From assembly GCF_964188315.1 (NCBI RefSeq), contig NC_135673.1, positions 50,406,001 to 50,470,000 of the forward strand: a DNA stretch of 64,000 bases, read 5' to 3'. The position numbers were made by a program, and so were the translations under genes. Below, in pieces: positions 4,098-61,934 of this stretch. This stretch comes from Podarcis muralis. Its lineage: Eukaryota. Every line of letters starts with the position of its first letter. Position 1 is the stretch's first letter. Below the pieces are notes generated by a model. That model ran no database searches. It was not told where the DNA came from and worked only from the letters and a program-made list of their open reading frames with translations.

Positions 4098-6160
4098 TTC
4101 CCCTCCTCTCTTTTTCTCCTCTCTTTCTTTCTCCTTCCCTCTTTCCTCCATCCCTCTCTTCTCTCTCTTCCCTTCCTTCCTTTCTCTTCTCTTCCTTTCT
4201 CCTCCTCTCTCTTTCCCCATCCCTCTCTTCTCCCTCATCTCTCACTCTCATTCTCCTCTTTTTTTCTCGTCTCCCTCCCTCTCTTCCCCCCTTCTCTTTC
4301 TGTCTCCCCGCCCCCGCTTTCTGCGCTTTGAGGGCGATTTCCCTTTATTTTGTATAAAAAATTGCTTTTTTCTTCCGGATTCTCATTTCCTTTATTTTTG
4401 GGGTTCTCCCCCCCCCAAAACTGCTCTTCCTATCACGTGATTCCTTCTCCCTCCCTCCCTCCCTCCCTCCTCCTCTCGGAAAGGCGGAGCGCGGAGCATC
4501 CTCTGCAGCGGCCGCCGGGCCAAACAGAGGCGAGGGCCTCCCTGCGCCCCCCCCCCGGAGCGGATCCCACCCCCTCCCCGGCGCCCCCCGAGCGCGGATT
4601 TCGAGGCCTGCGCGCCCTTCCCCCCGAAAACGCGCATTTTTACGCATCCAGACAGATCCGGCGGCGACCCCCGCCCTACGCCACCCTCCAGGAGCGCATC
4701 GTCCACCGGCGCCCCCCTAGTGCGGGTATTTGTGCCCCCTCCCAAAAGGCATCGGGACCCCCCTGCGGATTGGGCCCGAGTGAGGATTTCGCGGCCTGGC
4801 TGCGCCCGGCGAGAGCGCATTTCGCCGCCGGAGGGATCCAAGGATCCGGCCTCGTCCTGCTCCACTCCTCCCCCCGAGACCGGATTCCACCTTTTCCCGG
4901 AGGTCGGCGCATTTCCCGCTCTACAGCCTTCGGGAGCGCAACTTCCACTTTGTCGGATCCGTCCGTGGTCCCGTCAATCTCGCCTGCACCGCCCCCCCAC
5001 CCTGAAAGCGCATTTTCCCACGCTACGCGCAGACTCTCCTCCTGCAAAGGCGCATCTCCTCTCCAAAGGCGGGATCCTCTTCTTGGCGCATTTCCACGTC
5101 GGCGCGCAGCTTCTCCTCCTCGGATCCGGCCCCGGTCCCGCCATCCTCGCCTGCACCCCCCGAAGGCGCATTTCCCACGTTGCGCACAGATTCCATTGAG
5201 GGTCTGTCCTCCTCCAAAAGCAGGACCCTCGGGCGGCTTCTCCTGGGCGCATTTCCACGTTGGCGCGCAGCTTCTCCCCCTCGGATCCGTCCCTGGTCCC
5301 ATCGTCCTCGCCTGCGCATTTCCCACCTTTGGGCGCCTTTCCCCCCAGCGCATCCTTCCCGTGGGCCGGAGCGTCTCCATTCGCGGCCTGCGGCCCCGAC
5401 AGCGCATTTCCCGCCTTTGGGCGCGCAGCCTTTCCTCGCATCAGTCCTTCCCGTTGGTCTGCGCGCCCGCCCATCCTCGCCTGCGCGCCCGACGGCGCAT
5501 TTTCCTTCTGACCGTCTCCAAAAAGCGCATTTTCTGCATTTGGGCTTAGCCTTTCTTCGTCTGTTCAGACAGTCTCCGCCGGCGGCCGATCCTCGCCTGC
5601 GACCCCCAAAGCGCATCTCCCTCCGTTGGCGCGCAGCCTTTCCTCGTCTCCACGCTCAAGAGCGCATCACTCCTCTTGGCCAGAGACTCTCTGCCGGCGG
5701 CCCATCCTCGCCTGCGCCCTCCAAAGCGCATCTCCCTCGTTGGCGCGCAGACTTTCCCTGTCTTCGCGCTCAAGAGCGCATCAATCCTGTTGGCCGATTC
5801 TCGCCTGCGCCCCCCAAAGCGCATTCCCCATATTGAGCGCAGCGTCCCCGATTGCGGCCTCTGGAGCGCAACTTCCGCGTCCCGCCGCCGTCTCCCAAAG
5901 CGCCTTTTCCACGTGCGCCCGCTCGCCGGAGACTCCGTTGGCTCTTCTCCGCCGCCACCCTGCGCGCAACTGGAGCGCATTTCTTCTCCCGTACGTTTTG
6001 CGCCATGGCGAGGCTGCCGGGAGGAGCCTTTTCCAGCGCCTGCTGAGCGCCACTCTTCGATTCGGATTTCCATTCCCTTCAGGTGAACCGGCCGGCCCCA
6101 CCGCTGCCCCCATTTGGGGGTGCTGCCCCCCACTCCACCCCGACCTCCCACCCCTCGGAA

Positions 6161-11473
<5,313 letters not shown>

Positions 11474-14620: not shown

Positions 14621-17600
14621 CTACTGCATGCTGCAGCTGGCTTCGGGGAGGAACTCCTGCAGGTAGGTGATGGCCACTTTGGACAGGTAAGTCATGGTGC
14701 CAAAGCGCCCGCTGGGGGCGCTGTCATAGAGCAAGGTGCAGATGCCTGTGGCGGGGTCCCTCTCCAGCATGGCGTCATCCGCACCCAGGACTTTCTGCAT
14801 TTGGTGCAAAAAAGGAAAGAGGAGACAAGAGTCAAGGCCAGAGAGCAGAAATCTGTGCCATTATTTCATTTTTGACACCAATGTCACCAGCTTAGCTGCT
14901 CCGTTTCCCCAGGAACTATGCTGTGGGGCCGGGTGATCGATCAATAAATCATCCCAAACAGGTGCAGAAAATCAATAAAGACAATCGGCCAAAAATACGG
15001 GTGAGATGTCGCCGTTTGGCGCCACGATCCCACTTCTAACACCAATTTTGCAAGCAACGCTGCTCTGTTTCCCTGGGAATGGTGCTGTGGGGCTTGGGTG
15101 ATCAATCAACTGCCCTGCCCAAGGGTGCCCGCCCTCACCTGCTCCTGGCGGAACGCTTCATCCGCCATCTTGATGATGTCATCGATGCTGACAAGCCTCC
15201 CGGCTCCATCAAAGTCGACCTCAGCCAACAGGGTCAACACCCAGATGGTTTCCACGCAGAGCTGTCGGTATTCTGGCTGCGGGATCTTGTTCAGCGCCGA
15301 CTCGACGCCAACGGCAAACTTGATCTCACCCGGTGTCATCTGTCAAAAATAGAAAATGGGCGTCAGGATTTGAACCCGTGTCCAGCGGGAAATGGTAAAG
15401 AAACCAGGGGAGACTCTCCTCTCTCTCGTTCTTGCTCTTTTCATCTCTGTTTTGATCCCTCTTTTTTTAACTCTGTTTCAATCTCTCTCTCCATCTCTCT
15501 CTTGATGTCTCTCTCTCTCTACATCACCATCTGTCTCCCTCTTTCTCTCCCTCTTATCTCTTTCCTTCTTTCTCACTCTTTCAACCTCTCTCAATCTTTC
15601 CATCTTTCTCTCTCTTTCAATCTCTCCATCTCTCTGTGTCTCCATCTTTCCCTCATTCTCTCCCTCTCTCTCTTTATCTGTCTTTCAATTTCTCTGCCTC
15701 TCCCTGTTTCCATCTTTATCATCATCATCATCATCATTAGTATTATTATTATGTGCCAGTAGGGAAACCGAGTTGTCATTACCTCTTGGGTGGCGGAAGA
15801 CGGGAGGACAAAGCCACCGATGGATAGACCGTGGCACTAGGAAGAAAAGAGTGGAAATGGAGTCACCCTCTTGACAAATTTGCACCCAGGACCTGCTCCA
15901 GAGTCACACTCAGATTTGTGCTCGCTCTAGATTCAGACTCAAAGAGACTAGCGCATGCACCAGATTCAGCCTCATGCACTTAGGATCCGAATTCAGGAGA
16001 TCCGCATTCACTCCAGATTCAGCCTGGCACACTTTGGATTCATACTCAGATGTGTGCGTGCTCAGATTTGCGCACACACCAGATTCAACCTTGCACACTT
16101 CAGATCCAAACCCAGGAGATTCGCATTCACTCCATATTTGGCCTCATAAAACTCAAATCTGGGAGATTCGATCCTGTTCTGGAGTCACACCAGATTTGGC
16201 ACTCACCTTCTGCAGGACCTTCCACACCTTCGGATAGAAGCCCACTGGCACCCGGTTGAGGGCGCCATCGAGACGCCGTCGCCGTCGCCACCCGCCTTGA
16301 CGCGTCTCCTTGGTGGGGCGCCAATCACCCCCCTGCTGGATTTCGCTCCGGAGCTGGGCGATTCCGGCACGCTCTGTTTTGGTGGCGCCAGCCATTTCGT
16401 GGATGGAGACACCTGGTGCTGAGTCAGCGGTCCGCACTGCAGGGAGACAGCGGGGTTCTCAGTGCTGGATCAGGGTGGAAGGGAGCCCCCAGAGGAATCT
16501 AGTCTGACCCTGCAAGGACTGACCGCTGCGCTCGACGCCGAATTCCTTTCCGCTCAGAATGTGGTGCAGGAGGCTTTTGACGTCTGATGGGCTGAGGTTC
16601 AACAAGGTCTGCGTGGCTTCGTCGGCTGGGAGATAGGGAGGGAGAGGGGAAAGGAAGAAAGAAGGGAAGAGGGAAAGGAAGGCAGAAGAAGCAGAGAATG
16701 AAAGAAAATAAAGAAGAGCAAGCAAAGAAAGCAGAGAAAGGAAGAAGAGAAAGAAAGAAGAGAAAGCAACAAGAAAATGCAGAGAAAGGTAGGAAGAAGA
16801 AAGAACAAAGAATGAAGAGAAAGGAAGAAGGAAGAGAAAGAAGAATGAAAGAAGAGAGAAATAAATAAAAAGCAGAGAAAGGAAGAATGAGAAAGGAAGA
16901 AAGGAGAATGCAGAGAAAGAAAAAACATAAAAAGAGAAAGAAGAGAAAGAAAGAGATAAAGAAGAGAAGGAAGAAGACAAAGCAGAGGAAGAAGGAAAAT
17001 GGAAAGGCAGAAAGAGCAGAAATAGAAAGGAAGAAGAGAAAGCAGAAAGAAGGAATGAATATAAAGAAAAAAGAGAAAGAAAGAAAAAGAAGCAGAGGGA
17101 GAAAGAAGAGAAAGAAGCAGAGAAAGAAAGAGAAAGACAATGCCATATATCTGCTATTATATGGGGAAAATACAGTATTTCTCCTATTATACGGAGCAAT
17201 CCCCTACATCTGCTATTATGCGAGGGAGGGGGTATACTGTATTTCTCCTATTATATGGCACAATGCCGTATATCCATTATATGAGAAAAATACCGTATTT
17301 CTCCTATTATATGGGACAATTTCGCCTATTTTATGGAATTGGTGGCCTTGTGACTAGGCTCCTGCCTACCTGAGCACGACAGCGACTGCGCCAGCTCGGT
17401 CGCCATCACCTGGATGATGAGCCCAATGCGGAGGCGGAACATTTCGGCAAAGAGGGCCGGCTGCGTCCGGATGTACATGGCCAGGTAAACCATAATTTCC
17501 TGGAACCAGAAGAGAGGGAGAAACTACGAAGCCCAGAGGATTACGGTTCCTGGAGAGTAAATCTCCAGGGAATGAACTACGACTCCTGGAGGACTATAGT

Positions 17601-20600
17601 TCCCAGGGAGCAAATTTCCGGGGAACAAACCACTGTTCCCGGGAAAGCCGGGTGCCCAGAGTTCCTGGAAAATGGGGTCCCCGCCACTGTTCTCCCCAGC
17701 ACCCAGCACTCACCTGGGTCAAGATGCAGACGCTAAGGTTCCCCTCACTGGCATCCTCGATCAGGCGCGTGAGCTCCTCATACGGAAGGGGGCTGGCAGG
17801 GAAAAACAGCAGAGTTGGGAAGCCGAGAGTCATCTAGTCTGACCCCGATGAAGGGAATAATGTCTCACCCAACATGAACATTGAATCCAGGACACTGGGA
17901 TCGAGAGTCGCCAGCTCTACCAACTGTTTTGTATTTTTACGCAACATTTCAATGACAAATTTAATAAGGATCATAATTTAAATTTAAATAATTTAGATTT
18001 ACAGAAATTAAGAATAATTTAAAAAAGTGATAATACTAAGTTAAAAATTTTAAGCTTACATTTAATTTAAATCTGAACTTAAATTGGCAAATCTAAAAAA
18101 ATTAATTTAATTTAAATGATTTAAATTTATGGAAAGTAAATATTTAAATTTTAAAAATAAGGCATTATGGTAAGTCAAAAAATTTAAGCTTACATTTAAT
18201 TTAAATCTGAAATTGAATTTAAATATTTAATACCTAACCACTTTAATTTGAAAATTTAAATGTAGAATTTAAATTCAAGTTAAATGTAAATGTAAACATT
18301 CAATAATAATCATTTTGTTTTTAAGTTGTAATCATTCAACTTGATTTATTATTGCTTGTAAGCCGCTCTGAGCCTGGCCTTGGCTGGGAAGGGCGGGGTA
18401 TAAATAAAATTATTATTATTATTATTATTAAAATTTCAAAATTTTAAGCAAATTGAATTTGGATTGTACTTAAATTTAGAAATTTTATTAGTAATTTAAG
18501 TCTAAAAATAATTTTAAATTTTAAAACAAAATTAGCATTAAATTTAAATCAATTAAAATGAAAAAAATGACAATAATTTATAATTTAAAATTAATATTAA
18601 ATTTAAAAATTCAATCAGTAATAACAATAAATTCATACCTTTAGTATTCTACCTGTCATGGCCCATTTTCAGTTGGCCTGTACCAGCAAATTAAAAAGCT
18701 TTAAGTTAAGTTAAATTAAATTAAATTAAGTCTCTGAAAGGAGAGATGACTTTTGCACAAGAATGCAAGAAAATCAAATTAATTAATTGATTGATTGATT
18801 AACCTAGGAAATTAAAACTGAGCCCATTCTCCAGCTCCCAGTAAGGATACTGGGACTAAGGCCAACGTGCCCCTGGTGCAAGAGACATGGGTTTGACCCC
18901 TTCTGGAGGTCCAGATACCCCCCATTTTGCCCCCGATTATCTCCCCAGTTGGGATTGCCCCCCCCCGATTGCCTTCCCTGTTGGGATGGCCCAGTGCCGG
19001 AATCGAGTGGTGACCCCAAAAACTCACGCCGAGATGGTCCGTTCGCGAGGCTCCGGGGGGAGACCCACGGTGAGGTGCTTCTGGTGTGACAGGAGGCTGG
19101 TACAGGCCTGGGGAGAGAGAAGGGTACCTTCTCATCTACATTGACCTCCTTGAACTCTTCCCAAAAGGAGGCTGCCCAGAACCCTATTTTTTCTTCAAAA
19201 TTTTAATATTTTTTCAAAATATCCCAACCTCATCTAAAGCTTCTGCCTTCTTTCTCAGGACACCGGAAATGTAGCGGATCAAGCCCCACTGCCGAGCGGT
19301 GCCAGCTTTCGAATACAGCTCCGTAAGGAGGTCACCCACAGTGGCTCCCGCCTCACCATATAGCTCCGTCTCCCAATCGGGACCCCTAAAAGGAAGTGTC
19401 CAAGTCAGAAGGGGACCCCAGAAGGTCATCCAGTCCAACACCAACTTAAAAGCCAAGAATGGCAGAGAAATAGCATTTGAGTGGGATTATGGGAAAGATT
19501 ATGGGAAACAATAACATAAAATAAGGAAGGAGGGAAGAGAGAAAGGATCCTGTGCAAGTGGTCTTAAATCCCAGAGAAAGGACCCGGGGTCATCCAGTCT
19601 AACTCCCTGCAACGCAGGGCGATATACAGATTTAATCAATTCACCAAGGCCCGAAGTTCTCATGAAGGAAACGCCAATGGAAGAAAACTTTAGTTCCTAC
19701 TTGAGGCTGTACAATATGGATAGGCAGTTGGCTTGATCCTGCAGGGTGGCGCAAGCCCGGAGCTGATCCACCAATGACCGGCAGTCCACGTTCCCGTCGG
19801 CATCTTTTGGGAGGTCCGCCTCGGCAGGGAAAGATGTCTGGGGGCAGTGAGGGAGGCTGGTTGAGTGAGGAGGCACCCCAAATGTCACCCAGCAAAACCC
19901 ACTACGAGGGGTCTCAAAATGGAATGGGAAAACGCCCTCCCTCTTATGTAGCTTTTAAAAAAGGGAAAGAAAGAAACCTTCCCTCTGGCTTGGCTTTGAG
20001 AAATGGGAGTCTGGCATTGCGAGGGAAAAGCCTCACTCCCAATGGGCTTCAAGAAATGGGAGGTTCGGGCAGGAGGGGAAAGCCCTCCCTCTTACGTGGC
20101 TTTAAAGAAAGGGAGGGGAAAAGGGGTTTTTACCTTCTATGGGTTGGCTTTGAGAAAGAGGGTTTTCTGCAGAATTGAAAAGCATGGCTTTTCCCGCCCC
20201 CAAACCCAATCAGAACTGGCTACTCACCTTGCCATCTCGCGGCGACCCCAGAAGGTGGACTGAGTGGCGTGACTCCTGGAAGAGGCTGGAAGGGATGTAC
20301 ATGTCAACGTCTGCAAGGAGAAGGTGGAACGGTTGGGCTGGAACCCAGAGGTCATCCAGTCTGACCCGCTTCTGGGAGGCCATACTTACTCTCCACGTGG
20401 AGCTCCTTCGCCTTTGACCGCAGAGACACCAGGTCCTGGGTGGTGCGCACCGCCGCCCGGAAGCGGTGCAAGCCGGCTTTCTGACCCACGGGCGGGAGGT
20501 GGGCCTTGGGAGCCGCCTGTTGGAGGAGATGGTCCAGGTATTGGGCCACCTCGTCACAGATGTCCGCTGGAAAAGAGAGAGGGATGATGTTTCTCTGTGA

Positions 20601-23600
20601 AAAGAGGGGACGTCCTACCATCCCTTCTGACATCTCTCCGATGGGATCTGGGACACCTTTAAGGCAGCGTCTGTGTAGCCCAGAAGGTCCGGATTTATAA
20701 CAACAACAACAACAACAACAACAACAATTTATTATTTGTACCCCGCCCATCTGGCTGGGTTTCCCCAGCCACTCTGGGCGGCTTCCATAGAAACCAAAAA
20801 ACACTAAAATATCATACATTAAAAACTTCCCTGAACAGGGCTGCCTGTTTGAACCCTTTGCCAAAAATGGAGATGACCTATTCCATCCCCTCCGGCTTTT
20901 CTCCGATGACATGGGACAGCACTCCGACTGGGATGCTTTTAAGTCTGCGATCAGAACGATAAGGTTCGTCTCCAGTCCGAGTGAGCGATTGCAAAGAGGG
21001 ACATCCGGAGGGTATGTTCTGCGTTCAAGCCATCAATGCCCTCTTATCGTTCCGGGTTCGAATCACAAGCCAGGATGGCTTCAAAAAAGCTGCGGCATGG
21101 GAACACACCAAGGGCTTACCATCCGGCCCAGCGTCCATGAAACTCAGGTGGGAGTGGCACGAGGTGGTGAGGAAGTCCAACAAGCGACCGGTCTGGATCC
21201 TGCAAGGATCAGAGAATCATAGGTGACCCCCGAGGGATCCCTCCGAAATCGACCATCCTAAGAATGAAATCCTGGCAAAAGCTTCCCATAGATAAATTAA
21301 CCCAGAGCCAGATTCTTCTGTTGGGCTGATAATGATAACAATAATAATAATTTAATTATTTGGATGCCTCCTATCTGACAGCATTAAACGATTCCTGCAA
21401 TCCTCACCTCGCTCCTCCAAAATATCCGTCCTGCAATTTCCGCAGCATGGCCAAAACGGCCGGGTGGATGCCATCACCACTGTCATCTGGCCAGGCGGAT
21501 GAAAGGAATGAAAAGGGAAGAAAGGGAAGGAGAGAGAAGTTAGGATGGGAAAAGACAGCCATCAGAATAGAAGAGAAGAACGAGATCGAAATAAGCAGCG
21601 TAAAAGGGTGGCCATGAAAATTCAAGTCAAATCAATCCCTGAAATTCAGTGGAATTTCTGAATTATATTTTTTAAAGGAAGTCAACAGGTTGAGAGAAAG
21701 TTGAAGGAAAGTTCAAGTTAATTTGTTAAAAAGTATGATATTTAATAAATTTTTGAAATTTAAATTCCTGAAATGTTAAAAAAAAGTAGGTCCAAAAGTT
21801 AAGAGAAATGCGCATTGATTTGTTAACATTTCTGAAATGTCATAAAAATTCAAGACAATCTGTTAAGGGAAATGCGGACTAAAGTTGAATTTGTTAAGAT
21901 TTATAACATTTAATAAATTCCTGAAATTGAAATTTCAAAAAATATGGAAGTCAAAAGATTAAGGGAAAGATGCGTTGATTTGTTAAAATTTCTGAAATGT
22001 AATACGAATTAAAGTCAAGCTGTTGAGGGAAAAACGTATCAAAGTTGAAGTGAATTTCTTTAAACTTCTAACTTTTTTTTTAAGCGTTTATTAATTTTCC
22101 AATAAGAACATCCAATTAACATATCAAATCAAATCCAAAAAAAAAACAAAAACAAAAAAAAAACTCACAAAAAACTAAAAAAAAAAAATTCCAATTGTCT
22201 TCCAAATTGTAATAATTTTTGTTTTGGCTTCCCACGGTCTGAATTCTGAAGCGTTTTCAACATCATAGTCCTGCCTCTCATCATCATCAGTGGTTTTCAT
22301 AATTCCATATCGCGATTTTATCCTCCACGTTTTGTCTCTGGTTCTGTGATCCTCATTCATGTCAGAAAACAGACACTTTTTTTTCTATGGAGTTCAGATT
22401 TGTCCGTATATTATACTCTTTCAGCTGTTTTTGTTTTTCATCGCACCGCTTCATTTAATTGCATCCATTCCAGACTCTTTGAGAATTATTTTGGCAGCTC
22501 CCAGATCGTTAATCTTTCCCGTCAAGCTGTTATCAAAGAAACAGAGAGAAACCTCCTTCTGAAACTCCTTGTTGATTTATTCTTAAGCTGCCTGTTTGCA
22601 ATGTAGCCATATATCAGACAGTTAACAATTGGCCTTTGGAATCAACCCAATCCAATCCCCCCTCCGGGCCCTAGAGGGGGGCTGCCAGACATCCATTTAG
22701 CCCTTTCTCTTGCTCATAATAAAAAACTTCTTTTTGCAAACAGTTGTATATATAATATTGTTTCCAGTCTTTATGACCAACCATCAGTTAGCTCCTGTTT
22801 CTCTTAATCAGGGAGGTATTTCAGATATTCCATAAGTGCGTAGTGGGTAGACACCATTTTGTTCTTTGTTTTCGTCTTTAACGGGCATTTCAAATCTTAA
22901 AAGAAAAGTGGCTGCGAATAGGTCCCAATTACATATAAAAGTCCATCTGTACTCACTTTTTGAAGAGCAATTTAGGTTCTTAATGAGGCTTGGCATGCAA
23001 AACGAATTGTTAATGTTAGAAGAAGAAGAAAAAACATACCAAGCCCCTCCAGATCCCAAACATCATGATGAGGATCTCTTTGAACTTCGATCTTTTACAC
23101 CAGAGACTGTACATACTGCAGGTTTTTTTCCAGCTTCATCAGTTCAGAGCGTGTCTGTTTGGTTTTCAAATCTTTATATTTTCCCAAACAGATGCCTCTG
23201 GCTATGGGTGGCATCACAGGAGTGTCCGTCCGTCCCTTGCTCCGTGACCCAGTGCCCCTGCCCTGGGGCAAACCGCGGGTCATCGAGACAGTCCTCCCCT
23301 GCCCTGGGGAGGCTGCCAGGGCTAATTACCCCCATATCAGCCCTGAATTATCGGAACGGCTGGAGTCCGATCGTGTGGGAATCTGCCATTTCCCACCGCC
23401 AGAAACAGGAAGCCAAAACTTCTGACTTTTAATAAAGATCCAATTTGAGCTGTTAAGGGCAATATGTATGAAAGCTGAAGCAAAGTTGTTAAAAATTGTT
23501 AAAAGGGAAACGTGTACAAAAGTTGATTTGTTAAAAATCAGGCAATTTAATTGAACTTTCTGAAATTTCAAAAGGGTTTTAAATGTCAGAAATTTAATTG

Positions 23601-24251
23601 AAATTTAGTTGAAAATTCCAAAATTTAATTTCTGAAATTCAATTGAAATTTCTGAAATTTAAATTTATTAATTTTTTTACAAATTTATTTTAAATTTAAA
23701 ACAGCATGAGACACACCAAACATCATGTGCGAGACGGGGAAGATGATGGTGGGACGCCCTGTCATCCTCCAGCGGCTGCACAGGTAAGAGAGATCTGTCC
23801 GGAGCATTTCAACGATCATTTTGTTATCGAGTGCCAGGAAGAATTGCTGCTGGTCAAGGAACTGTGAGGAGGGAGGGAGAGGTGGATAAACAAGGGGGGG
23901 AGGGGAAGGGGGGATATATTGAAACATTTTTTTGATCGTTGTACCCATGAAAGAGGAGAATGGAAAACGGTGCTTTCCCCCCAGAGGGGGAAATAACAGC
24001 TATGATCAAATTGGCGATTTTTTGTTAAGAGGATAAACTAATTGGCGGCGTTCTCCTGATTCACCAAATTTGCGGGGCGGGGGGGATTTGAAGGGGGTTG
24101 GACTGGATGACAGCCAGGGAACTTCCCACCTGTGGCGTGAAGGCAAAGATGGTGCTCCGGATATCGTAGAACTTGGAGGTGCCCAGAACGCCCATGTGGC
24201 GGAAGGGGCGCCCACTGAGGGTCATGTGCTGGTTACGGCCTGTGGAGAAGA

Positions 24252-24294
<43 letters not shown>

Positions 24295-27200
24295 TATTAT
24301 TTACTCCCTGCCCATCTGACTGGGTTTCCCTAGCCACTCCAACAAAAGAAAATAGAAATACATTAAAACATCAGCGGAAGGCAGTGGAAGACAGGAGTGC
24401 CTGGCGTGCTCTGGTCCATGGGGTCACGAAGAGTCGGACACGACTAAACAACTAAACAACAACAAAGCATCAGTTGTTTAAAACTTCCCTAAAATGTCAT
24501 TCAAGGAAATGTTATAGGGTTTCGAACCCGCACCTTAGATGTTGCCTTAAAGGCGTCCCACATATCTTCTGATTCTATCCTGCTCATTTTATGTTTATTT
24601 CCCATAATCCCACTCGAATACCTTTTCTCTGCTGTTCCTCCCCTTTATTTCTAAACGGAATCAATTACCGCACGTTTTGGGGTCAGACTAGATGACCCAA
24701 GAGTCTCTTTCTCCTCTTCCAATTCTATCTTGCTCATTTTATTTTTATTTTATTTCCCATAATCAATCCCACTCAAATGCCTTTTCTCCACTGTTCCTCC
24801 AATTTGTAATTTTTTGGGGTCAGACTAAATGACCTGGGCTCCCTTTCCACATCACCTAATCGGGCGTAGATATGGCTGAGGATCCTCGCCGGTTGCACCC
24901 GGATCGGACAGACGCCGGAAACCGTCTCCGTCTCAATCCCCTCCTTCCTCAAAGCCGATTGGATCCCCTCCGTCTCGGCCAAGATGCAAACTATGGGGAA
25001 ACTGGAGTTAATTTGGAGCTGCTCCGGTCCCGGAAAACCCCGAAACAGGCGTCAATCAAGGAATCAGAATTCAAACCCCAAACCCAAGTCTGGCTCAACC
25101 TGGGTCGTCAAAGCCTCCCGGACTAAACTCGGCTCCAATTTTATGAAATATCCTATTATCCTGGAGACTATTAAAGCACCCATAAAAATTTGGATGAATA
25201 TAAATAAAAATAATAAGGATGACCCCTATCAACATGAGAAATTAACAATATGGGCCAACCCAAAATTAAAAATTGGAAATCAAGTAATAATTTGGCAAAA
25301 TTGGATGCAAAAAGGTATTTTGACATTGAATCAATTAATTGATGAAAATTAAAAATTTGTGGAATATAAGACTGCAAGTAAAGTCTGGATTAACCAGTGA
25401 AACACCATGGCAATACATCCAATTGAAACATATGTTGGAAAGGCAGTTTGGCTATAGCAGCATCGGAAACAGCCATGCTGCTACAAGATTCAATTTGTGC
25501 AACAAAAACAAAAAGCTCTTGCACTATATATACAAAAATACACTTGCACTATATAAAACCCTACTCAACAGGAAGAAATATGATTTAGAATATGATAGAC
25601 AAAAATGGAGTGAAGTGTTGGGGGTACAGATAACAAATGATTTATGGGAGTCAAGTCAACAGAAATAGTCTCCATGAATCTAAGACTAAGACTTATTCAG
25701 CAGAAAATAGTAATATTCAGAGTCCACTGGACTCCAGCAAAACTATACCAGAAGAAAATAACAAATGCAGACAACTGCTGGAGATGTGGGAGTAAAAATG
25801 TGAACTTAGTACATATGTTGATTAACTGCCCAATGATAAGATCATTTTGGTGTGAGGTGAGGATATTTATAGCAAGAGTAATAAAAAGAAATTGTTATTT
25901 AGGGGAATTGAATTTAATTCTAAATTATATTCCAGAAATGTGGGAGATTTCTTTTTTTTTTTTTTAAATATTTTTTTATTGCTTTGTTTTCCAGGGTCAA
26001 AGTACAACGTCAATACATCGTCGATAACACAACAAAAGCTTTTTTTTTTTTTACAAAGTGAAAAAAAACAAAAAAGAATACACTTTTCCAAATCTTTTTT
26101 TTTTTTCATCATCAACTGGACTTCCCCACATCCTCCATCCCTGCATTCTTTACAATAAAAATCAACAGCAAATTAATACCTTGTTTCATGTGTTTTTGTA
26201 TTTTCATCTAAATATTTACTCTAAAAGTTAAGCTTTTCTCAGTCATAACTTAGTTTCAATCATTTCCGAATCTCAATACTGAAGCCTGTTTTTCTCGAGA
26301 CTTAGCAAATTCTCAACATTCATATAACTTAAAATGTTTTTGTAAATAGTCCTTAAATTTTTTCCAGTCCTCTTCCACTGCCTCTTCTCCCAGGTCTCGG
26401 ATTCTGCCAGTCATTTCAGCCAATTCCATGTAGTCCATCAGTTGCGTGTGCCACTCTTCCAGTGTGGGTAACTCCTGTGCCTTCCAGTATTTGGCTATAA
26501 GGATTCCTGCTGCTGTAGTTGCATATAAAAAGAAAGTTCTATCTTTCTTTAGCACTCTCTGGCCCACAATGCCCAGGAGGAAGGCTTCTGGTTTCTTATG
26601 AAAGGTATACTTAAATACCTTTTTCAACTCGTTATAAATCATTTCCCAAAAAGCCTTCACCCTCGGGCATGTCCACCAAAGGTGAAAGAATGTTCCTTCA
26701 GCCTCCTTACATTTCCAACATTTATTGTCAGACAAATGATATATCTTTGCAAGTTTGACTGGGGTCATGTACCACCTGTACATCATTTTCATAATGTTTT
26801 CTTTCAAGGCACTACATGCCGTAAATTTCATACCGGTGGTCCATAACCTTTCCCAGTCTTCAAACATAATGTTGTACCCAATATCTTGCGCCCATTTTAT
26901 CATGGCTGATTTGACTGTCTCGTCTTGAGTATTCCATTTAAGCAACAAGTTATACATTCTTGAAAGCACTTTCGTCTTAGGTTCAAGTAGTTCTGACTCT
27001 AATTTTGATTTTTCCACCTGGAAACCAATTTTTTTGTCCTTTTTAAAGGTCTCTAAAATTTGGGCGTAATGAAACCAGTCTCGCACCTTTCCTTTCAATT
27101 TTTCAAAGCTCTGCAACCTCCAAGTGTCCCCCACTTTTTCTATTATTTCACAATATTTTGCCCAGCCACCCCCCATATTAAGTATTTTTGTGGCTTTTGC

Positions 27201-30200
27201 CTCCATCGGTGACAACCACCTCGGAGTCTTATTTTCGAGTAAGTCCTTGTATTTAATCCAGACAGTAAACAAAGATTTCCTGACAATATGGTTTTTAAAT
27301 AACTTATGAGACTTTACCTTGTCGTACCACAAATATGCATGCCATCCAAAAGCATTGTTAAACCCTTCCAGATCTAGGACATCAGTGTTTTCTAGCAAGA
27401 ACCAATCTTTCATCCAGCAGAAGGATGCAGCTTCATAATACAACCTTAAGTCCGGCAGGGCAAATCCCCCTCTTTCCTTCGCATCTGTTAGTATTTTAAA
27501 TTTTATTCGGGGCTTTTTGCCCTGCCAGACAAACTTCATAATGTCCCTCTGCCACTTTCCAAAACACTCCACCCTGTCCACGATCTGCAGGGCCTGAAAC
27601 AAAAACAACATTCTTGGCAATACATTCATCTTAACTGCTGCGATTCTTCCCAACAAGGAAAGTTTCAGTCTTGACCAGATTTCTAAGTCCTTTTTGATTT
27701 CAGACCAACATTTTTCATAATTATCTTTAAACAAATTCAAATTTTTCCCAGTCAAATTAACCCCCAGGTATTTCACTTTTTTAACTACATTTAGTTCCGT
27801 TTCCTTCTGAAACCCCTCTATTTCTAAAGGTGTCAAGTTTTTCGCCAGGACCTTAGTTTTTTGTTTATTTAACTTGAATCCCGCCACCCGACCAAACTCA
27901 TGGATTAGTTCTAAAGCTCTTTTTGTACTGGGTTCTGGCTCCTGTAGTGTCAAAACCAAATCATCTGCAAAGGCCTTCAGTTTATATTGTTTTCCTCCGA
28001 CCTGTATTCCTTCCACCCGCTGGTCCTTCCTAATCAAGTTCAGCAAAACCTCCAGAACAGAAATAAATAGCAAGGGTGATAGGGGGCACCCCTGTCGTGT
28101 TCCTTTTTCAATTTTAAACTCCTCTGTCACCACATTGTTTACTATCAATTTAGCTTTTTGTTCTGAATAGATTGCTTCAATACCGTTTTGGAACGCCCTT
28201 CCCACTCCCATCCCTTCCAAATTTTTCTTCATAAATTTCCAAGATATGTTGTCAAAGGCCTTCTCCGCATCTATAAATATCAAAACTGCTTTCGTATTCA
28301 AGTTTGTCTGTAGTAGTTCCAGGACATCCACAATGTTCCTAGTGTTGTCAGACAAATGCCTGCCAGGGAGGAAGCCTGCTTGGTCTTTATGAATTACTTC
28401 GTTTAAAACTTTTTTCAATCTGTTTGCCAAAATATCAGCAAAAATCTTGTAATCCACGTTTAGGAGTGAGATAGGACGATAGTTCTTAAGTTGAGTCTTT
28501 TCAGATTCCAATTTTGGTATCAAAGTAATGAATGCCTCTTTCCACGATTCTGGTGCCCCCTTCCCCTCCATAATTTGGTTGCATACCTCCATCAATGGTT
28601 GGGTCAAATATTCCTTCAATGTCTTATAATACTTGGAGGTAAGTCCATCTGGGCCCGGGGATTTGCCTAATTGCATGTTCTGAATGGAACTTTCAATTTC
28701 CTGTTGTGTTATTTTATAATTCAGGGTTGTTTGTTTATCTTGTGTTAGTTTTTCCAGGCCGTAGCTTTTTAAAAATTTATTTATATCAGTCTCCACTTGG
28801 GGTCCTTGAGTGAACAATTTTTTGAAATATCTCTGGAAACACTTTCTAATTTCTTCTGGTTTCTGAATACATTCTCCTTCAACCTCTAGATTGGTAACAA
28901 AGTTCAATTTTTGTCTCCTTTTCAGCTGCCATGAAAGCAGCTTCCCACATTTATTTGCCGATTCAAATGATCTTTGTCTCATCTGTTTAATTTTCCATTC
29001 AACTTCTTGATTTATCAGTTTCGCATATTGTGCTTGATGGAGTTTTATTTCTCTTAAAACTTCTTTTGATTTTGGATTAAGTCTCAACCTTCTCTCTCCG
29101 TCCTTTATCTTTTCCAAAATCTTGTCCTTTTTACCATTCCAGAATTTTTTCCTAATAGTATTCTGTTGTATCAGAAACCCTCTCATAACAGCTTTACTTG
29201 CGTCCCAGATTGTTTTCTTTTCCACCGAAGTGTTCAAATTTATTTCAAAATAGTCTTTCATCGTTTTTTGGGCCTTCTTTACAATCTCCTGATCTCTGAA
29301 CAAAGAGTCATTCATTCTCCATCTGAAGGATCCAGCTGGTGTGAGTCTCAAGTCTATTTTCAAGGCGTTATGGTCGGAGCAAGTTTTGGGGCAGATCTCT
29401 ATTTTTTTAGTCTTAGGTGCCAGTCCTCTAGATATCCAGATTTGGTCGATTCGTGTCCAAGATAGGTGGGCCTCAGAAAAGAATGTTCCCTCTTTACCTA
29501 GAGGGTTCTTTATCCTCCAAATGTCAATCAAGTCCATGTTGTCTGTAAGTTCAAAAAAAGTCTTTGGTAGTCTGCCATCTTTAGTCAAATTTTGGTTTTG
29601 TGACTTATCCATGTGTGTGGAGACAACCCCATTCATATCTCCCATCAAGATGATGTTATTATAGTCAACATGGTCCAGCATTATCTCATGCAGCTTCTTG
29701 TAAAATTCCGATTTCCCCTCGTTCGGTGCATAAATTCCTACTATCAGAAATTTTTCTCCTTGTGATTGTATTTCAATCGCCAGAATTCTTCCTTGTTCAT
29801 CTTTAAACACAAATTTTGGTGCTAGGCTCTCCTTTGCATATATCACTACTCCTCTTTTCTTTACTTTGTCTGATGAAATAAATTCTTGGCCTAGTCTCTT
29901 GTTAATTAATACTCTTCTGTGGAGCCTGGTCACGTGAGTTTCTTGAAGACAAATGACGTCTAGTTGTTCTTTCCTCAATATATGAAAAATCCTTTTCCTT
30001 TTTTCGGGGGAGTTTGCACCATGAATGTTCCAACTGAAGAGCTGCAGAGACATCCTGGATCAGTTTGTCAGCCAATAGGGTTGTCTCCCTTGTCGTCTAT
30101 TTCTGGAGGTGGGTCTTTTTCACCAGGCGGGGGGGGGGTGGCCAAGTACCTGCTGTTCCTTTCCGAAGGTCCTCCCCGTGGTCGTTCAGGAACTTTTCTT

Positions 30201-33200
30201 GCTCCTTTGCTGTTCTAATTCTTACCTTCTTCTCTTTCCAATTAAAAGATAGTCCTTGGGGGAATTCCCACCTGTAAGGAATTGTGTTGTTTCTCAGTAA
30301 TCTTGCCAGATCTTTATATGTAATTCTTAAGTCCAACAACTGTTTTGGTATATCTCTGAAGATTTCTGCTGTCTTTCCCTGTATCACCAATGAATTTTTG
30401 AAGTGTAGGCCGAGTATGTTATCTTTTTCTTGCTTAGATCTCAATATGATCAAGCAATCTCTTGGTTTATCCTTCTTAGCCACTCTTCCCAGTCTAAAGG
30501 CGGTGACAATTTTGAAGTCCTTCTCTTCTGCCAAGCCCCAGAACTTGGATATTTCTGCTGTCAAAAAGCCGGTCAGATCTTCCTTTTCTAATTCTGGGAT
30601 ATTTCTAAGCCTAAGATTGCTTTCTCTGTTTTTCAGCTCCGCCATAGACAGGTAGGCCTGCTGTTCAGTAACCTGTCTGCTCAGTGGTCTTACTTCTCCT
30701 CTTAGTTCCTCTATCCTTTTTTTATTTTGGTCTGCTTTTGCACTTGCTTCCTCGGCTAATTTTCGATTCTCTGTTGTAGTCTTTTCAATATTTCCTATCG
30801 CCTGTGTATTTTGAGCAACTTGGTCTGTCAATTTATTAATTGTAGCTGTCACCTGGTCAAATTTAGCCGCTTGTTCATCAGCTTTCTTGTTTAAAGCTGC
30901 CAGTTGGTCCAATATTTCTTTAGAGATAGGGTCTAGCCCTCCTGCAGCCATATCCTCCAAAACTGGCTGTTTAAGTTGTCCTTCTTGCAAACCTGTCACA
31001 ATTGGAACAGATGACCTGCGTTGCTGCACAGGCAAAGTTAATTGCACTAATTCGGCTTGTTTTGCTTTCTTGCCAGCCCTTGTTTTTCCTGCACCACTCA
31101 TTCCACAGCTGTCTATGTTTCAAGGTCAAATTGTAAATCCCATGGGAAAAGCAATCCAAAAAGTAAACATCCAGACATAAAAAATTCCAAAACAACCAGC
31201 AGTTCTCAGAGACTGATAATTCCACAATCCAGCAGGGGGAGCACCCCAGAGGTTAGAGAGAAAGATGAAAATTTTCCATTAAGTTCCCAAGTAAAGTAAA
31301 ATCCAAAACAGAGGGGGGAACCCTCTAAATTCCCTTTAAACTGCAGAGAGTAAAAGTTCCTTACAAAGGTGCTTGCAACAGTTCCTTTCTTGTAACTTGC
31401 AAAATAGCCCAATGAAACTTTATATCTCTATACACAGTCACCACAGTCTGATGTTACTTTGTATCCAGACAGCCCGAGAGCTGGGTCTCATAACTTTATA
31501 ATCCACAAAAGATAAAGAGGAATAACACAGTCTCTGTCCACTTATAATACAGTTTTAATTTTTCCTTAACTTTTTAGCAATCAAGTCCGAATTTGCAGGG
31601 TAAATTCCAAGTTCTTTTGAACTCCTTTCAGCGCTTCCGTTTTAGAAAGACTTTGCTCAGCACTTTAAACAGAGACGGAAGACTGACTTCCTTTTTAGCG
31701 TCTCCCGCTTTCAGCCGAAATTCACGAATTACTGTTCAAATAGAGTCTCAAATTTCTTACTCACGAGTATGTTGTTTCAAATCAAATGTTCAAAGAAGAA
31801 AGGTCAGCGCTCATCATCAGCAGCCGCGCGGCTTCACTTCCGCGGAAAGAGCGATGGATTCACAGCACCGCTACCCCCTCCACGTTCCGGAGCCCCTTAC
31901 GGGGTCCCTTCTACGTTTCCGAGGTCGCTCCTGGTGCCCGCCGAATCCCACGGCCACGGGCTCACTCTACCCGTGGATTTTCTGAATGGGTCGTCACCGT
32001 GCCGCAGCGCACGACCCTTTTCCGCGGAGCCGCTCTTCAACAGCTGAAGAGGACCGCCATTGCCGTTTCGCGCCGCCTCCGGAAGTGTGAAATGTGGGAG
32101 ATTTCAAGGGGTAAAAAAAAATGGATGTACCGTGCTATGTTAGAAGCAAAGCAACTTGTTTTGATGAATTGGACTAGCCGCAAAAAGTTTCCATTGAGCA
32201 CATGGATTGATAATATGGGCAGACTAGCTACATACGAACGAATTGCATGTCGGCACAAATTAAGAATGGATAAATATCAATAAATCTGGAAGGAATATTT
32301 AAGCGATAAGGCGGATAGTGGTGGGAAGTAGGGGGAGGAGAGAGAGGCGGGGAAATATTGTTAAAAAGGTGGTCATAGGTATATCAATGTATCCAAATCT
32401 GAATTGTCAAACTGTGTTATTATTAAAACAAAAAAAATCCTTCCAGTAGCACCTTAAAGACCAACTAAGTTAGTTCTTGGTATGAGCTTTCGTGTGCATG
32501 CACACTTCTTCAGATACACAGGTATCTGTGTATCTGAAGAAGTGTGCATGCACACGAAAGCTCATACCAAGAACTAACTTAGTTGGTCTTTATGGTGCTA
32601 CTGGAAGGAATTTTTTTGTTTTGACTATGGCAGACCAACACGGCTACCTATCTGTAACTGTGTTATTATTGTTATTATGGTTTTTGTTCTACAGTGGTAC
32701 CTCGCAAGACGAATGCCTCGCAAGATGGAAAACTCGCAAGACGAAAGGGTTTTTTTGTTTTTTGAGCTGCTTCGCAAGACGATTTCCCCTATGGGCTTGC
32801 TTCGCAAGACGGAAACGTCTTGCAAGTTTGTTTCCTTTTTCTTAACACCATTAATACAGTTGCGACTTGACTTCGAGGAGCAACTCATAGAACGCGGTAT
32901 GGTAGCCTTTTTTGAGGTTTTTAAAGACTTTGGTGATTTTTGAAGCTTTTCCAAAACTTTCCCGACACCGTGCTTCGCAAGACGACAAAACTCGCGGAAT
33001 GAATTAATTTCGTCTTGCGAGGCACCACTGTATGTGTCTTTTGTGGTTGGTGTTTTTTCCCCCCCAAATAAATTTTTATTAATTTTTATTAATTTTCCAA
33101 CAAAATTATACAATTTTATCCAAATTTTAACAAATTAATTCAAATTAATTGGTTGATGTTTGTATCAAAAAAATTATTAAATAATTTTATTTTATTTTAT

Positions 33201-36200
33201 TTTTACCCCCCCCCCCCGGAATGGGCTTACCTTGGACCACCACGTCTGGCTTGGGGACAGTCGAGAAGCGCCGGTTGAGAGGATCAATTTCGCCCGGCGC
33301 CAGGAAGCCCTAAGGAGGGGGGGGAGACGGGTTTGATTCCGGAGCAGGATCCTGAACCTGGGACCCCGGGCACCCAAGGGTGCTCACCTCGGAAAGGAGG
33401 CACCCCAAGATGTACAAGGACTGGCCCCACATCAACGGCAGCTTCCCCATCGGAACCCGGTCCACCGTGTGAGGGTTTTGGCATTCCTCGTCGACCTGCA
33501 GGGAGAGAAGGTTGTGGGTTCTAGAAATGGGAACCCAGACGGCAGACCCCCCCCCCAAATAAAACCGCTCACCTTGTCCGATGGGACGCTGTAGAGTTCT
33601 GGGATCAAGCGGATCCCGTCCTTCCCCTTGATGAGGATGCCTTCCAGGGCTTCCCGGTACTCCTGGACCTTTGGACAGACATGCATCAATCAGGGAATCG
33701 GAATTTGAACCCTGAACCCAACCTGGGTCATCAAACCCCCCCCCCCAACCTGCTCGTCATTGCCACGAAAGATTCCATCAATCAGCAGGTAGGTCCAAAA
33801 GAGTGGCCACTCGCACTCGATACTCTCGAAAAGCTTCAGCTCGGAGGGTTCGTAGTAGAGGCGTTGGGGGTCCTGGGAAAATAAGAAAATAAATAAGTTA
33901 AAGTAAAGAAATAAATATAAAAATGAAATGAACAAATAAAATAAAAACTAAAAACAAACAAAATTAAAATTGAAAAACATAAAATAACAAAACAAAACAG
34001 AACAGAACAAAACTCACCTCTTTGGGAGTCCGGTAGCCATCGCGGAGGAACCGGCAACAACCATAGCGACCCTTTGGAAGAGGAGGAAGGGGAAACTGCT
34101 TTACAAATAATTTTTACTGATTTTTCCCAATGTGACTTTTTAAAAAAGAAATGAGAAAATGATTAATTTTTAAAGAAAAAAATAAAAAATTATTTGTTTT
34201 CTTTTTTTTTCCCTTAAAAAAAAATACATCTCCCCCCCCCCCAATCTGATTTCCCCCCAATTTTCCCCCAGAAAAATTCTTTGATTTTTGGGGGGAGAAA
34301 TTTCATTTTCTTTGAATGCTTTTTTTGCCTGAGAAGAATTAATTGTTTTGAGAAATCCTTATTGTTTCCAAATGATTTCGGCCATTCCAAAAAAAAAAAC
34401 TCTGAATCTTTACTGAAAATTAATTTTAAAAAATCAATTCCCCCCCCCCGAAAATTCTTTGAATCCTTTTTATTCCCCCAGGAAATGGAATATTTTTTGA
34501 AAATTTTTGCCTGCAGCTTGTCGATGATTTCCTGCTTGGTTTTCTCCACCACCTCAGTGTCCTCGACGGCAAAGGCTGGGTACGAGATGATGGACAGGAG
34601 GCTGGCGTCAATCTCCTTGGAAGCCGACGCCCTCGGCAGCATCGAATGGAGGATGGACTGCAGGGAGAGGCAGACAAATCATAGAGCACCATCCTAGAAG
34701 GGTCATCTGGTCTAACCCCCTCAAGAAAAGGGAGACCAGGAAAGCAGGATGCAATCATAGAGCCAGAAGAGACCCGAGGGCCACCAAATTTCAAGGCTAA
34801 TTTCAAATTGTGAAAGTGAGTTTAAAATTTTTAACTTTTAATGTTAATTTAAAATTTTTAATGTTTTCAATTTCAAAGTTCCCATGTTAGTTTTAAATTT
34901 AATTTTTTTAATGTTAATTTAAAATGTTAATTTATTTTTTCTTTATTTTAAATTTTAAATGTTAATTTTAAGTTTTATTTTAAAATTTTAATGTTAATAA
35001 TTTTGTTTGATGCCATTTTTTTGTTAATTGTTCCATTTTCCTTGTTAATTTAAAATTGTAAAGTTTCAATGTCCATTTAAAATTTCCATTTCTATTCAAT
35101 TTCAATTTTCAATTTTAAAAGTCTCGGGCATCCGGGACGGGTGGCCCTGCAAGCTCTGCATTCAAAACAAACACCCTGAGGAGGAGGCTACCTAGAACCC
35201 TCTGGATCTTAATTTTGGGAATTTGGGGGAGAGTGTTGGTCGCAATTTTTCTTGATTTGTCTCAGAGTGGTTACTATCGTGGTTTCCTTGCCGGGGAGGA
35301 GGGAGAGACGCAGAGCCTGCTTGTTTTAAAGGAGCAAAGCCGGAGAGGAGCCTCTCCTGCATTATTAGCAGCATCCTTCTCCACACACCCCACGCGTGCT
35401 GCTTGTCCCTTGAGTGCTTTTCCTTCCCTCCCCACTTAAAATGTGGTTACAAAGCACGGATCCACATGGATCCTCAGGATTTTTGCACTGGGTCACCCCA
35501 AACTCACCGTCAGATCACATGTCTGTGGCCACAGCATGAACCACAAAAAAACATACATCCACTGTTTCGTTTAGAATACCTTTTTCTTGTTTTCCTCCTC
35601 TAAAAACTACGTGCGTGTTATGGTCAGATGCGTGTTACAGAGCGAAAAATACGGTATTTCGGTAACTCAACCCCCCGCCAAACCCAGGTCTGTACCAGGC
35701 AGTGCTGCACCTCGTCCGACAACACATGGATCACTGATTGGGGGCTTCCGTTGGCCCCGAAGAGGTCCAGCTCGTCCAAGGCCTCCAGGGCCGCCTGCAG
35801 AGGGAGAAAGAGCACCCATGGATGAGCACCCATGCTTAGGCACCCCTGAGTGGGCACCTGATCCCGCCTCGCCCCGTGCCCCTCACCTTGGCCATGCCGA
35901 CTGAGCTGGCGTTAAGCTCTGTGATGCCCCGGTTAGTCTTGTCGCCACGTTCCCAGATCCCGAAATCCTGCCCCACAAAAAACATGGGTTATTATTATTA
36001 TTGGGGGTATTAGGGGCTACTGTTTTTATTATTGCTATTACTAGCAGCTATTATGATCCTGAGTTCGGATTATGGACTTATTATTTTTATGAGGAATTCT
36101 TCTGAGGGGTGTTTGTTATTCTTAGGGGTTTGTTATTCTTATTTGGTTGACCATTTTTATTAGGGGTTATTATTATTGATATTATTAGGAGTTACAGTAG

Positions 36201-43494: not shown

Positions 43495-48011
<4,517 letters not shown>

Positions 48012-61900: not shown

Positions 61901-61934
61901 GGCTTCGGGATTAGCGCTCCGCTAGCCGTGTCTA

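What the first reader, a model, noticed from the sequence alone, without database searches (positions are those of the whole stretch)
16207..16436. PHKA1 fused exon deletes the RRLS/PKA segment of the multiphosphorylation domain
Seen: one uninterrupted 230-nt exon reads ...[32 protein letters not shown]...LQK. Only 21 nt separate EIQQ from KETRQ, so no intron can lie there. Established (recalled): mammalian PHKA1 has an exon boundary after EIKQ, then alternatively spliced VEFRRLSISAESQ (the PKA site, rabbit Ser1018) and a Ser-rich stretch before KDSRQGQWQRRRR. Inference: a genomic deletion or intron-loss event permanently removed the main PKA-target segment of the alpha subunit, while upstream ERS and SIHE motifs and the CaaX box are retained. 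This would change adrenergic control of muscle glycogenolysis in this lineage.
Basis: partly seen in the sequence, partly recalled or inferred. Interest (0 to 1): 0.72.

Follow-up and report, generated by a model that had tools for sequence, protein, structure and literature searches.

The report
Lizard PHKA1 lost its PKA-site exon
In this lizard, a small in-frame deletion in the muscle phosphorylase-kinase alpha gene fused two exons and removed the optional 13-residue mini-exon carrying the protein-kinase-A site, which a rattlesnake, bird-like genomes, a frog and mammals all keep. The change is real but modest, because mammals already make the same site-less form by splicing.

Summary
Window 16207-16436 (minus strand) is one 230-nt PHKA1 exon with AG/GT splice sites. 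It joins ...LRSEIQQ to [22 protein letters not shown] through only seven codons (GGDWRPT).

The whole PHKA1 gene lies in the window (41292 to 14624). It has a CaaX end and no stop codon in the 30 exon segments checked.

Relatives split this stretch into four exons:
- A, ending ...EIKQ
- B, a 39-nt mini-exon with an RRxS site
- B2, an optional 15-17 codon exon
- C

I found B with good splice sites in a rattlesnake genome (QLDRRRRSLSESK) and in bird-like contigs (QLDKRRQSLTGSK). It also appears as a 13-residue isoform difference in a bullfrog (LDRRRQSLAAEGQ) and in mammals (VEFRRLSISAESQ).

The lizard therefore carries a derived in-frame deletion, or an intron loss. It removed B, B2 and about 17 codons of C after the split from snakes.

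The functional claim is overstated. Mammals splice B out naturally, and the literature treats alpha Ser1018 as non-essential, secondary to the beta-subunit sites.

I could not search the joined protein model or other lacertids. A second PHKA1 copy elsewhere in the genome is not excluded.

The parts
14624..41292 (-). Complete PHKA1 gene (phosphorylase kinase regulatory subunit alpha, muscle type), from exon 1 (MRSRSNSG...) to the CaaX end (...CSMQ)
   Evidence: tblastn of a whale PHKA1 (P0332) finds hits along nearly the whole protein, in order on the minus strand. The 30 in-frame exon segments I extracted carry no stop codon. Two N runs (37504-37705, 37734-37862) lie inside the gene and were left untouched.
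16207..16436 (-). Fused exon, made of exon A plus the 3' part of exon C of relatives (230 nt, entered in phase 1, ends in phase 0)
   Evidence: It is continuous coding sequence flanked by ctgcag| and |gtgagt.
16312..16332 (-). Seven codons (GGDWRPT) between EIQQ and KETRQ. The fusion junction lies at 16333|16332.
   Evidence: In DNA alignment A2 these bases align with the last codons of the variable part of exon C: Crotalus GGGGATTCCTCCACC, and the L004 and L006 equivalents. They are therefore exon-C remnants, not intron.
16333..16434 (-). The exon-A-equivalent part. It keeps the motifs holding the autophosphorylation serines of mammalian alpha (VSIHE, LRSEIQQ).
   Evidence: Alignment to 8jfk_M residues 979-1012. 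The site list comes from PMC11950179.
16437..16523 (-). 87-nt intron upstream of the fused exon (gtcagt...ctgcag). It has an in-frame stop if retained.
16524..16626 (-). Upstream exon ...[34 protein letters not shown] plus the first base of the split Val codon
15837..16206 (-). 370-nt downstream intron made largely of a short repeated unit. It holds no coding match.
15780..15836 (-). Next exon ([18 protein letters not shown])
15139..15342 (-). Next exon ([27 protein letters not shown]...), notably diverged from other tetrapods
14624..14803 (-). Last coding exon with the CaaX box CSMQ and the stop codon

Best explanation
This is the wall-lizard orthologue of PHKA1. An in-frame genomic deletion of roughly 1-1.5 kb (sized on the snake locus) joined the end of exon A (after ...EI[K/Q]Q) to the interior of exon C.

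The deletion removed:
- the exon A donor site;
- mini-exon B, 39 nt, which carries the RRxS protein-kinase-A site equivalent to Ser1018;
- optional exon B2;
- the three introns between these exons;
- about the first 17 codons of exon C.

Consequences (inferred, not tested): the alpha subunit of this gene cannot carry the PKA site in any isoform. It does keep the autophosphorylation motifs, the basic [13 protein letters not shown] calmodulin-binding region and the farnesylation box. The enzyme would then resemble one built from the natural mammalian alpha isoform that skips exon B. PKA activation would run through the beta subunit alone, with at most a modest loss of the secondary enhancement that alpha phosphorylation gives.
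For: Exon anatomy and frame. Gap against human alpha.

Four-exon structure in Crotalus horridus locus L005:
- A at 4264-4383
- B (QLDRRRRSLSESK) at 4725-4763, with a ccag acceptor and gtgaac donor
- B2 at 5535-5579
- C at 5659-5832

Other relatives:
- B in bird-like contigs L001 and L002, with ttgcag/gtgaag sites.
- Bullfrog isoforms differing by 13 residues that contain RRRQS.
- Mammalian isoforms with and without B and B2.

Within the lizard:
- The GGDWRPT codons align to the 3' end of exon C.
- No B-like open frame in 14000-42000 rises above shuffle noise.
- The only R[RK]x[ST] motif in the exon cores is one that mammals also have.
- The gene is constrained. dN/dS is about 0.15 against the snake over about 516 codons.
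- 14 runs guessed as DNA or untyped, from 5 studies, hold the sequence.

Literature on the secondary role of alpha Ser1018.
Against: - There is no transcript evidence.
- No other lacertid, teiid, skink or gecko could be compared. The event is dated only as 'after the split from snakes', and fixation in the species is not shown.
- Synteny is only partly as expected. RPS4 lies upstream as in the human X-linked block, but HDAC8, which follows PHKA1 within 1 kb in the snake, is replaced here by a Cys-loop receptor gene.
- The lizard C-terminal exons look faster-evolving with two outgroups but not with the frog.
A second, canonical PHKA1 elsewhere is therefore not excluded.
- The mechanism is not resolved: plain deletion, or cDNA-mediated intron loss of a B/B2-skipping transcript that used an internal CAG acceptor.
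Confidence: 0.78

Rival explanations
1. The window holds a diverged second copy of PHKA1, either a duplicate or a copy in a rearranged sex-linked block. A canonical PHKA1 with exon B exists elsewhere, so the lineage has not lost the alpha PKA site.
For: - HDAC8 does not follow PHKA1 here, as it does in the rattlesnake.
- There are 39 lizard-unique versus 16-18 snake-unique residues with bird-like and beaver outgroups.
- One exon of the neighbouring RPS4 gene differs from human RPS4X at 8 of 50 positions.
- Earlier notes report a fast-evolving, expressed TAF1 duplicate about 4 Mb away on the same piece (not checked by me).
Against: - The gene is complete across all exons, with no stop codon in the 30 extracted exon segments and a retained CaaX box.
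- dN/dS is about 0.15.
- RPS4 next to PHKA1 fits the ancestral X-conserved block.
- The rate excess vanishes with the frog outgroup.
- The notes I could query name no other PHKA1 in this genome, but they cover only a small part of it.
Confidence: 0.1
2. The outcome is the same but the mechanism differs. A reverse-transcribed mRNA that skipped B and B2 and used a cryptic CAG acceptor inside exon C recombined with the gene and erased the introns. There was no simple genomic deletion.
For: - The junction is exactly at the exon A boundary and is in frame.
- The snake exon C has an in-frame CAG a few codons upstream of the retained part.
- Transcripts that skip B exist in birds and mammals.
Against: - The flanking introns (87 nt and 370 nt) are intact, whereas cDNA-mediated loss often takes neighbouring introns too.
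- A deletion between the two CAG(G) microhomologies gives the same product.
- Nothing here separates the two mechanisms.
Confidence: 0.09
3. Assembly artefact: a collapsed or mis-joined region hides the introns and exons B and B2.
For: The gene contains two N runs further upstream, and no raw reads could be laid.
Against: - Contigs of 14 runs guessed as DNA or untyped, from 5 studies, hold 95-99% of the sampled words of 15100-16650.
- The junction is in frame and flanked by good splice sites.
- A collapse would not be expected to leave an open, conserved reading frame.
Confidence: 0.02
4. The short form is ancestral, and mammals gained the RRLS segment.
For: Invertebrate alpha subunits have short acidic linkers without RRxS.
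Against: - Exon B, at 39 nt with RRxS, is present in a snake, bird-like contigs, a frog and mammals.
- An unnamed fish-like transcript (P0380) has QLEDRRLS.
Confidence: 0.01

Closest known systems
Mammalian PHKA1 splice isoform lacking residues 1012-1024 (UniProt 'isoform 3'; for example P0114 beaver and the 1151-residue RefSeq X-isoforms)
   Same: The alpha subunit lacks the 13-residue VEFRRLSISAESQ segment and so lacks the Ser1018 PKA site. The flanking EIKQ and [22 protein letters not shown] are kept.
   Different: In mammals this is a regulated splicing choice, and exon C is complete (22 residues between EIKQ and KDSRQ). In the lizard the absence is fixed in the gene, B2 is gone as well, and only 7 residues remain.
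PHKA1 of the timber rattlesnake Crotalus horridus (P0356; locus L005, GCA_051820455.1)
   Same: It is the orthologous gene in a compact squamate form, with the same flanking exons. DNA identity in exons is 68-85%.
   Different: The snake keeps separate exons A, B (QLDRRRRSLSESK), B2 and C across about 1.3 kb, and has HDAC8 directly downstream.
[quoted passage not shown] 1993, J Biol Chem 268:23208; cited in PMC11950179; the paper itself is not held)
   Same: The lizard change lies exactly in this variable, alternatively spliced, disordered segment.
   Different: That work describes splice variants and the alpha-M versus alpha-L divergence in mammals. It does not describe a genomic loss of the PKA-site exon.
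PHKA2 (liver alpha subunit)
   Same: Same family and domain order, with a variable Ser-rich linker before RQGQWLRRRRLDG.
   Different: All PHKA2 sequences seen have LDGAINRVP and a long Ser/Pro-rich linker. The window has LDGALNRVP, as PHKA1 does.

Membership tests
Phosphorylase kinase alpha/beta regulatory subunit family | C-terminal KPBB_C domain (Pfam PF19292) | tested here: met
   The exon peptide hits PF19292 at E 1e-07 and 31.9 bits, above the 27-bit cut-off.
Phosphorylase kinase alpha/beta regulatory subunit family | N-terminal glucoamylase-like (GH15) region, with hits along nearly the whole protein | tested here: met
   tblastn of a 1220-residue mammalian PHKA1 finds ordered hits from residue 1 to 1220 on the minus strand. 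Pfam was not run on the N-terminal exons themselves.
Alpha (not beta) subunit | Closer to the alpha chain than the beta chain, and a C-terminal CaaX box | tested here: met
   PDB alpha chain E 9e-22 versus beta chain E 9e-06. The gene ends ...CSMQ.
PHKA1 (muscle) rather than PHKA2 (liver) orthologue | PHKA1-type residues in the conserved block (LDGALNRVP, not LDGAINRVP), and best matches to named PHKA1 proteins | tested here: met
   All named PHKA2 sequences carry AINRVP, and PHKA1 of mammals, frog and snake carry ALNRVP.
PHKA1 (muscle) rather than PHKA2 (liver) orthologue | Conserved neighbourhood (HDAC8 downstream, RPS4X nearby) | tested here: inconclusive
   RPS4 (Ribosomal_S4e) lies about 3 kb upstream. 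HDAC8, which follows PHKA1 in the snake, was not detected downstream, where a Cys-loop receptor gene lies instead.
Vertebrate alpha subunit with a complete multiphosphorylation domain | 39-nt mini-exon B encoding an RRxS protein-kinase-A site between exons A and C | tested here: not met
   A and C are fused with 21 nt between them. No B-like frame in 14000-42000 rises above shuffle level. B is present in snake, bird-like contigs, frog and mammals.
Vertebrate alpha subunit with a complete multiphosphorylation domain | Motifs around the autophosphorylation serines (GVERS, SIHE, L[KR]SEI) | tested here: met
   Actual phosphorylation cannot be tested with these tools.

The most novel reading that the evidence does not exclude
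Lacertid lizards have taken the alpha subunit out of cAMP/PKA control altogether. On this reading the loss of exons B and B2 and the apparent excess of changes in the C-terminal regulatory exons are parts of one rewiring of phosphorylase-kinase hormonal control in this lineage. That would make these lizards a natural knock-out for asking what alpha phosphorylation contributes in vivo.
Probability: 0.12. Interest if true: 0.5.

Novelty: new variant of a known kind. Interest (0 to 1): 0.3.

Why it matters
Phosphorylase kinase is the textbook example of hormonal control by phosphorylation, yet the contribution of the alpha-subunit PKA site has never been settled. Mammals can only be studied as mixtures of splice forms.

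A vertebrate whose gene cannot encode the site would be a clean natural comparison for enzymology and muscle physiology. That holds only if this is the sole muscle alpha gene.

The finding also shows that the 39-nt PKA-site mini-exon is conserved from frogs to mammals, snakes and bird-like genomes. I did not find that stated in the papers I could search.

On present evidence the physiological effect is probably small.

Tried and rejected
   - Local scripts kept the whole window as a BLAST subject or scan target.

2. Exon-level word search. It returned only exon-sized ORFs from host DNA in other samples. None was lizard-like and none was fused.

3. Big profile-free search. It gave mostly fragments. 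One strong-looking hit (P0118, a 3055-residue HYR-repeat protein) was spurious.

4. Word search with a beaver protein region.

5. Profile from an invertebrate or eel scaffold plus the window's exon peptides as separate rows, meant to pull out full-length squamate proteins. MAFFT scattered the fragments, so I dropped it.

6. Joined spliced model.

7. Teleost QRYRLPSIES. I first took it for the homologue of exon B. P0380 carries both QLEDRRLS and a later RQRLSS motif, so it is more likely part of exon C.

8. W-linked gametologue. I considered this and think it unlikely. The scan's notes lie on 19 pieces, which fits a male 18+Z assembly, but this is indirect.

9. Run accessions of the unnamed contigs. 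I found them in no paper.

10. Wullrich et al. 1993. The paper is not held.

Full report
**Observation**

On the minus strand the sequence reads ctgcag|TG CGG ACC ... CAG AAG|gtgagt between 16436 and 16207. This is a 230-nt exon. Its first two bases complete a Val codon started by the G at 16524 of the upstream exon (...[16 protein letters not shown], donor gtcagt). The intron between them is 87 nt.

The peptide contains ...[16 protein letters not shown], then GGDWRPT, then [35 protein letters not shown]. Against solved structures it matches the alpha subunit of human phosphorylase kinase (8jfk_M) in two blocks, chain residues 979-1012 and 1040-1081. Residues 1013-1039, which include the RRLS site, have no counterpart. 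The beta subunit matches far more weakly. Pfam gives KPBB_C.

**The gene**

tblastn with a mammalian PHKA1 finds hits along nearly the whole protein, in order on the minus strand. They run from MRSRSNSG at 41292 to ...CSMQ and a stop at 14624, a compact gene of about 27 kb. The 30 exon segments I extracted carry no stop codon.

Two N runs inside the gene were left as they are. The conserved block has LDGALNRVP, as in every named PHKA1. All PHKA2 sequences seen have LDGAINRVP.

Against the rattlesnake orthologue, about 516 C-terminal codons give pN 0.17 and pS 0.62, so dN/dS is about 0.15. The gene is under purifying selection and is not a pseudogene.

**What relatives have at this place**

- **Mammals.** Mammalian proteins returned by the searches differ by presence or absence of VEFRRLSISAESQ (exon B) and of a further SNGGH...LMSPS.. 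piece (B2) between EIKQ and SPGT.... Exon-sized ORFs from mammalian DNA show an intron directly before SPGT.
- **Bullfrog.** Two NCBI isoforms, P0343 and P0115, differ by 13 residues, LDRRRQSLAAEGQ.
- **Bird-like contigs.** Two unnamed Logan contigs (L001, L002) have exon A ending EIKQ|gtgagg. They then have a 39-nt exon, ttgcag|QLDKRRQSLTGSK|gtgaag (RLDKRRQSLIGSK in L002), followed by exon C.
- **Rattlesnake.** The genome of Crotalus horridus (L005, found through the partial protein P0356) has four exons:
  - exon A at 4264-4383;
  - exon B, QLDRRRRSLSESK, at 4725-4763 with canonical sites;
  - a B2-like exon at 5535-5579 with a GC donor, which makes it less certain;
  - exon C at 5659-5832.
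- **Other squamate-like sequences.** Two further unnamed sequences (L004, and transcript L006) show B2 and a full exon C.

Exon B with an RRxS site is therefore old and widely kept in tetrapods. It is optional in mammals, the frog and bird-like transcripts.

**What happened in the lizard**

The 21 nt between EIQQ and KETRQ align with the last codons of the variable part of exon C in the snake, L004 and L006. They are a remnant of exon C, not of an intron.

A scan of the minus strand of 14000-42000 for B-like peptides gives nothing above shuffled sequence. The top score was 26, against 21-31 in shuffles. The true B exons score 27-44 inside introns of 1.3-1.7 kb.

The simplest reading is one in-frame deletion from the exon A donor into exon C. 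It removed B, B2, three introns and about 17 codons of C. In the snake an in-frame CAG lies a few codons upstream of the retained part. This suggests either a deletion between two CAG(G) microhomologies, or cDNA-mediated loss of an A-to-internal-acceptor splice. I cannot tell these apart.

Because the snake keeps the four-exon state, the event postdates the split of this lizard's lineage from snakes. Earlier notes of this scan name the genome as the common wall lizard, Podarcis muralis. I did not verify that.

**Function**

The motifs around the autophosphorylation serines, the basic calmodulin-binding block and the CaaX box are kept. The only R[RK]x[ST] motif in the exon cores is NRRFST, which mammals share. 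No replacement PKA consensus is evident.

PMC11950179 lists Ser1018 as the PKA site of alpha. It notes that the segment is a disordered loop invisible in cryo-EM, and that Ser1018 phosphorylation is considered non-essential and merely enhances the effect of beta phosphorylation.

Natural isoforms also lack exon B. Together these points suggest the lizard enzyme behaves like a constitutive exon-B-skipped form, with at most a modest change in PKA responsiveness. This is inference. Nothing functional was tested.

**Caveats**

- **No transcript or raw-read evidence.** After that I gave no tool call a reference or letters from those places. Local scripts still held the whole window. The only support for the assembly is that 14 runs guessed as DNA or untyped, from 5 studies, hold 95-99% of the sampled words of 15100-16650. 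Six small runs guessed as RNA hold 32-56%, which is about the exon share.
- **Joined model left out.** I could not retrieve this species' annotated protein or any other lacertid.
- **Synteny is only partly as expected.** RPS4 lies upstream, but HDAC8 is not downstream as it is in the snake. A Cys-loop receptor gene is there instead.
- **Possible second copy.** With bird-like and beaver outgroups the lizard has 39 unique residues against 16-18 for the snake. With the frog it is 22 against 24. I therefore keep about a 10% chance that this is not the only PHKA1.

**Verdict**

The deletion reading is supported and refined: B, B2 and part of C were lost, the change is derived within squamates, and the snake is intact. 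The physiological claim is unsupported and probably overstated.

This is a new, lineage-specific variant of a known gene in a segment already known as a hotspot of splicing and evolution. Its interest is modest.

Noticed in passing
L005:5535-5579; L004:494-538; L006:1-47: A second optional exon (B2, 15-17 codons, for example SGGLHSLEASMEASQ or AGALHFLEDGADPAQ) lies between the PKA-site mini-exon and exon C in squamate-like sequences. It matches the mammalian SNGGH..LMSPS.. insert. The lizard has lost it too. The snake copy has a GC donor.
   Followed up: partly
window 44045-44866 (-): Exons of a ribosomal protein S4 gene (Ribosomal_S4e, KOW, 40S_S4_C) lie about 3 kb upstream of PHKA1. One exon differs from human RPS4X at 8 of 50 positions, all conservative changes, which seems high for this very conserved protein.
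   Followed up: partly
window 6766-11473 (+): A Cys-loop (GABA-A/glycine-type) receptor gene (Neur_chan_LBD and Neur_chan_memb hits) lies convergent to the 3' end of PHKA1. In the rattlesnake, HDAC8 follows PHKA1 within 1 kb, so there is a synteny break right after PHKA1 in the lizard.
   Followed up: partly
window 15139-15342 (-) and other C-terminal exons: The lizard C-terminal exons carry many unique replacements at positions conserved in snake, bird-like, frog and mammal sequences. For example, 42 of 67 residues are identical to the snake, which itself is much closer to mammals. The relative-rate test is significant with two outgroups but not with the frog.
   Followed up: partly
window 16627-17200: The intron upstream of the GVERS exon is a long purine-rich (AG/GAA-type) low-complexity tract.
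   Followed up: no
window 15900-16200: The 370-nt intron downstream of the fused exon is built of repeated units of roughly 60-70 nt (cagattc...cacactt...).
   Followed up: no
window 37504-37705 and 37734-37862: Two N runs lie inside PHKA1. The second abuts the end of the exon that ends ...LAQMTASG.
   Followed up: no
window 61756-62872: A tandem array of units about 119 nt long, open on both strands over several hundred codons (repeated ...GRPEAERPSRQADIRRVGSLAGVPHKAPHAADSS...).
   Followed up: no
window 49736-50800 (+) and 55262-56188 (-): Long ORFs that look like mobile-element remains: an ORF of 354 residues, and a 308-residue ORF with an integrase-like start. I only noted them and did not analyse them.
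   Followed up: no
P0380 (unnamed Logan transcript): A fish-like PHKA1 fragment carries both QLEDRRLS (exon-B-like) and a later VRQRLSSFESFD motif. The teleost QRYRLPSIESLD motif at the start of exon C is therefore probably a second basophilic site rather than the homologue of exon B.
   Followed up: no
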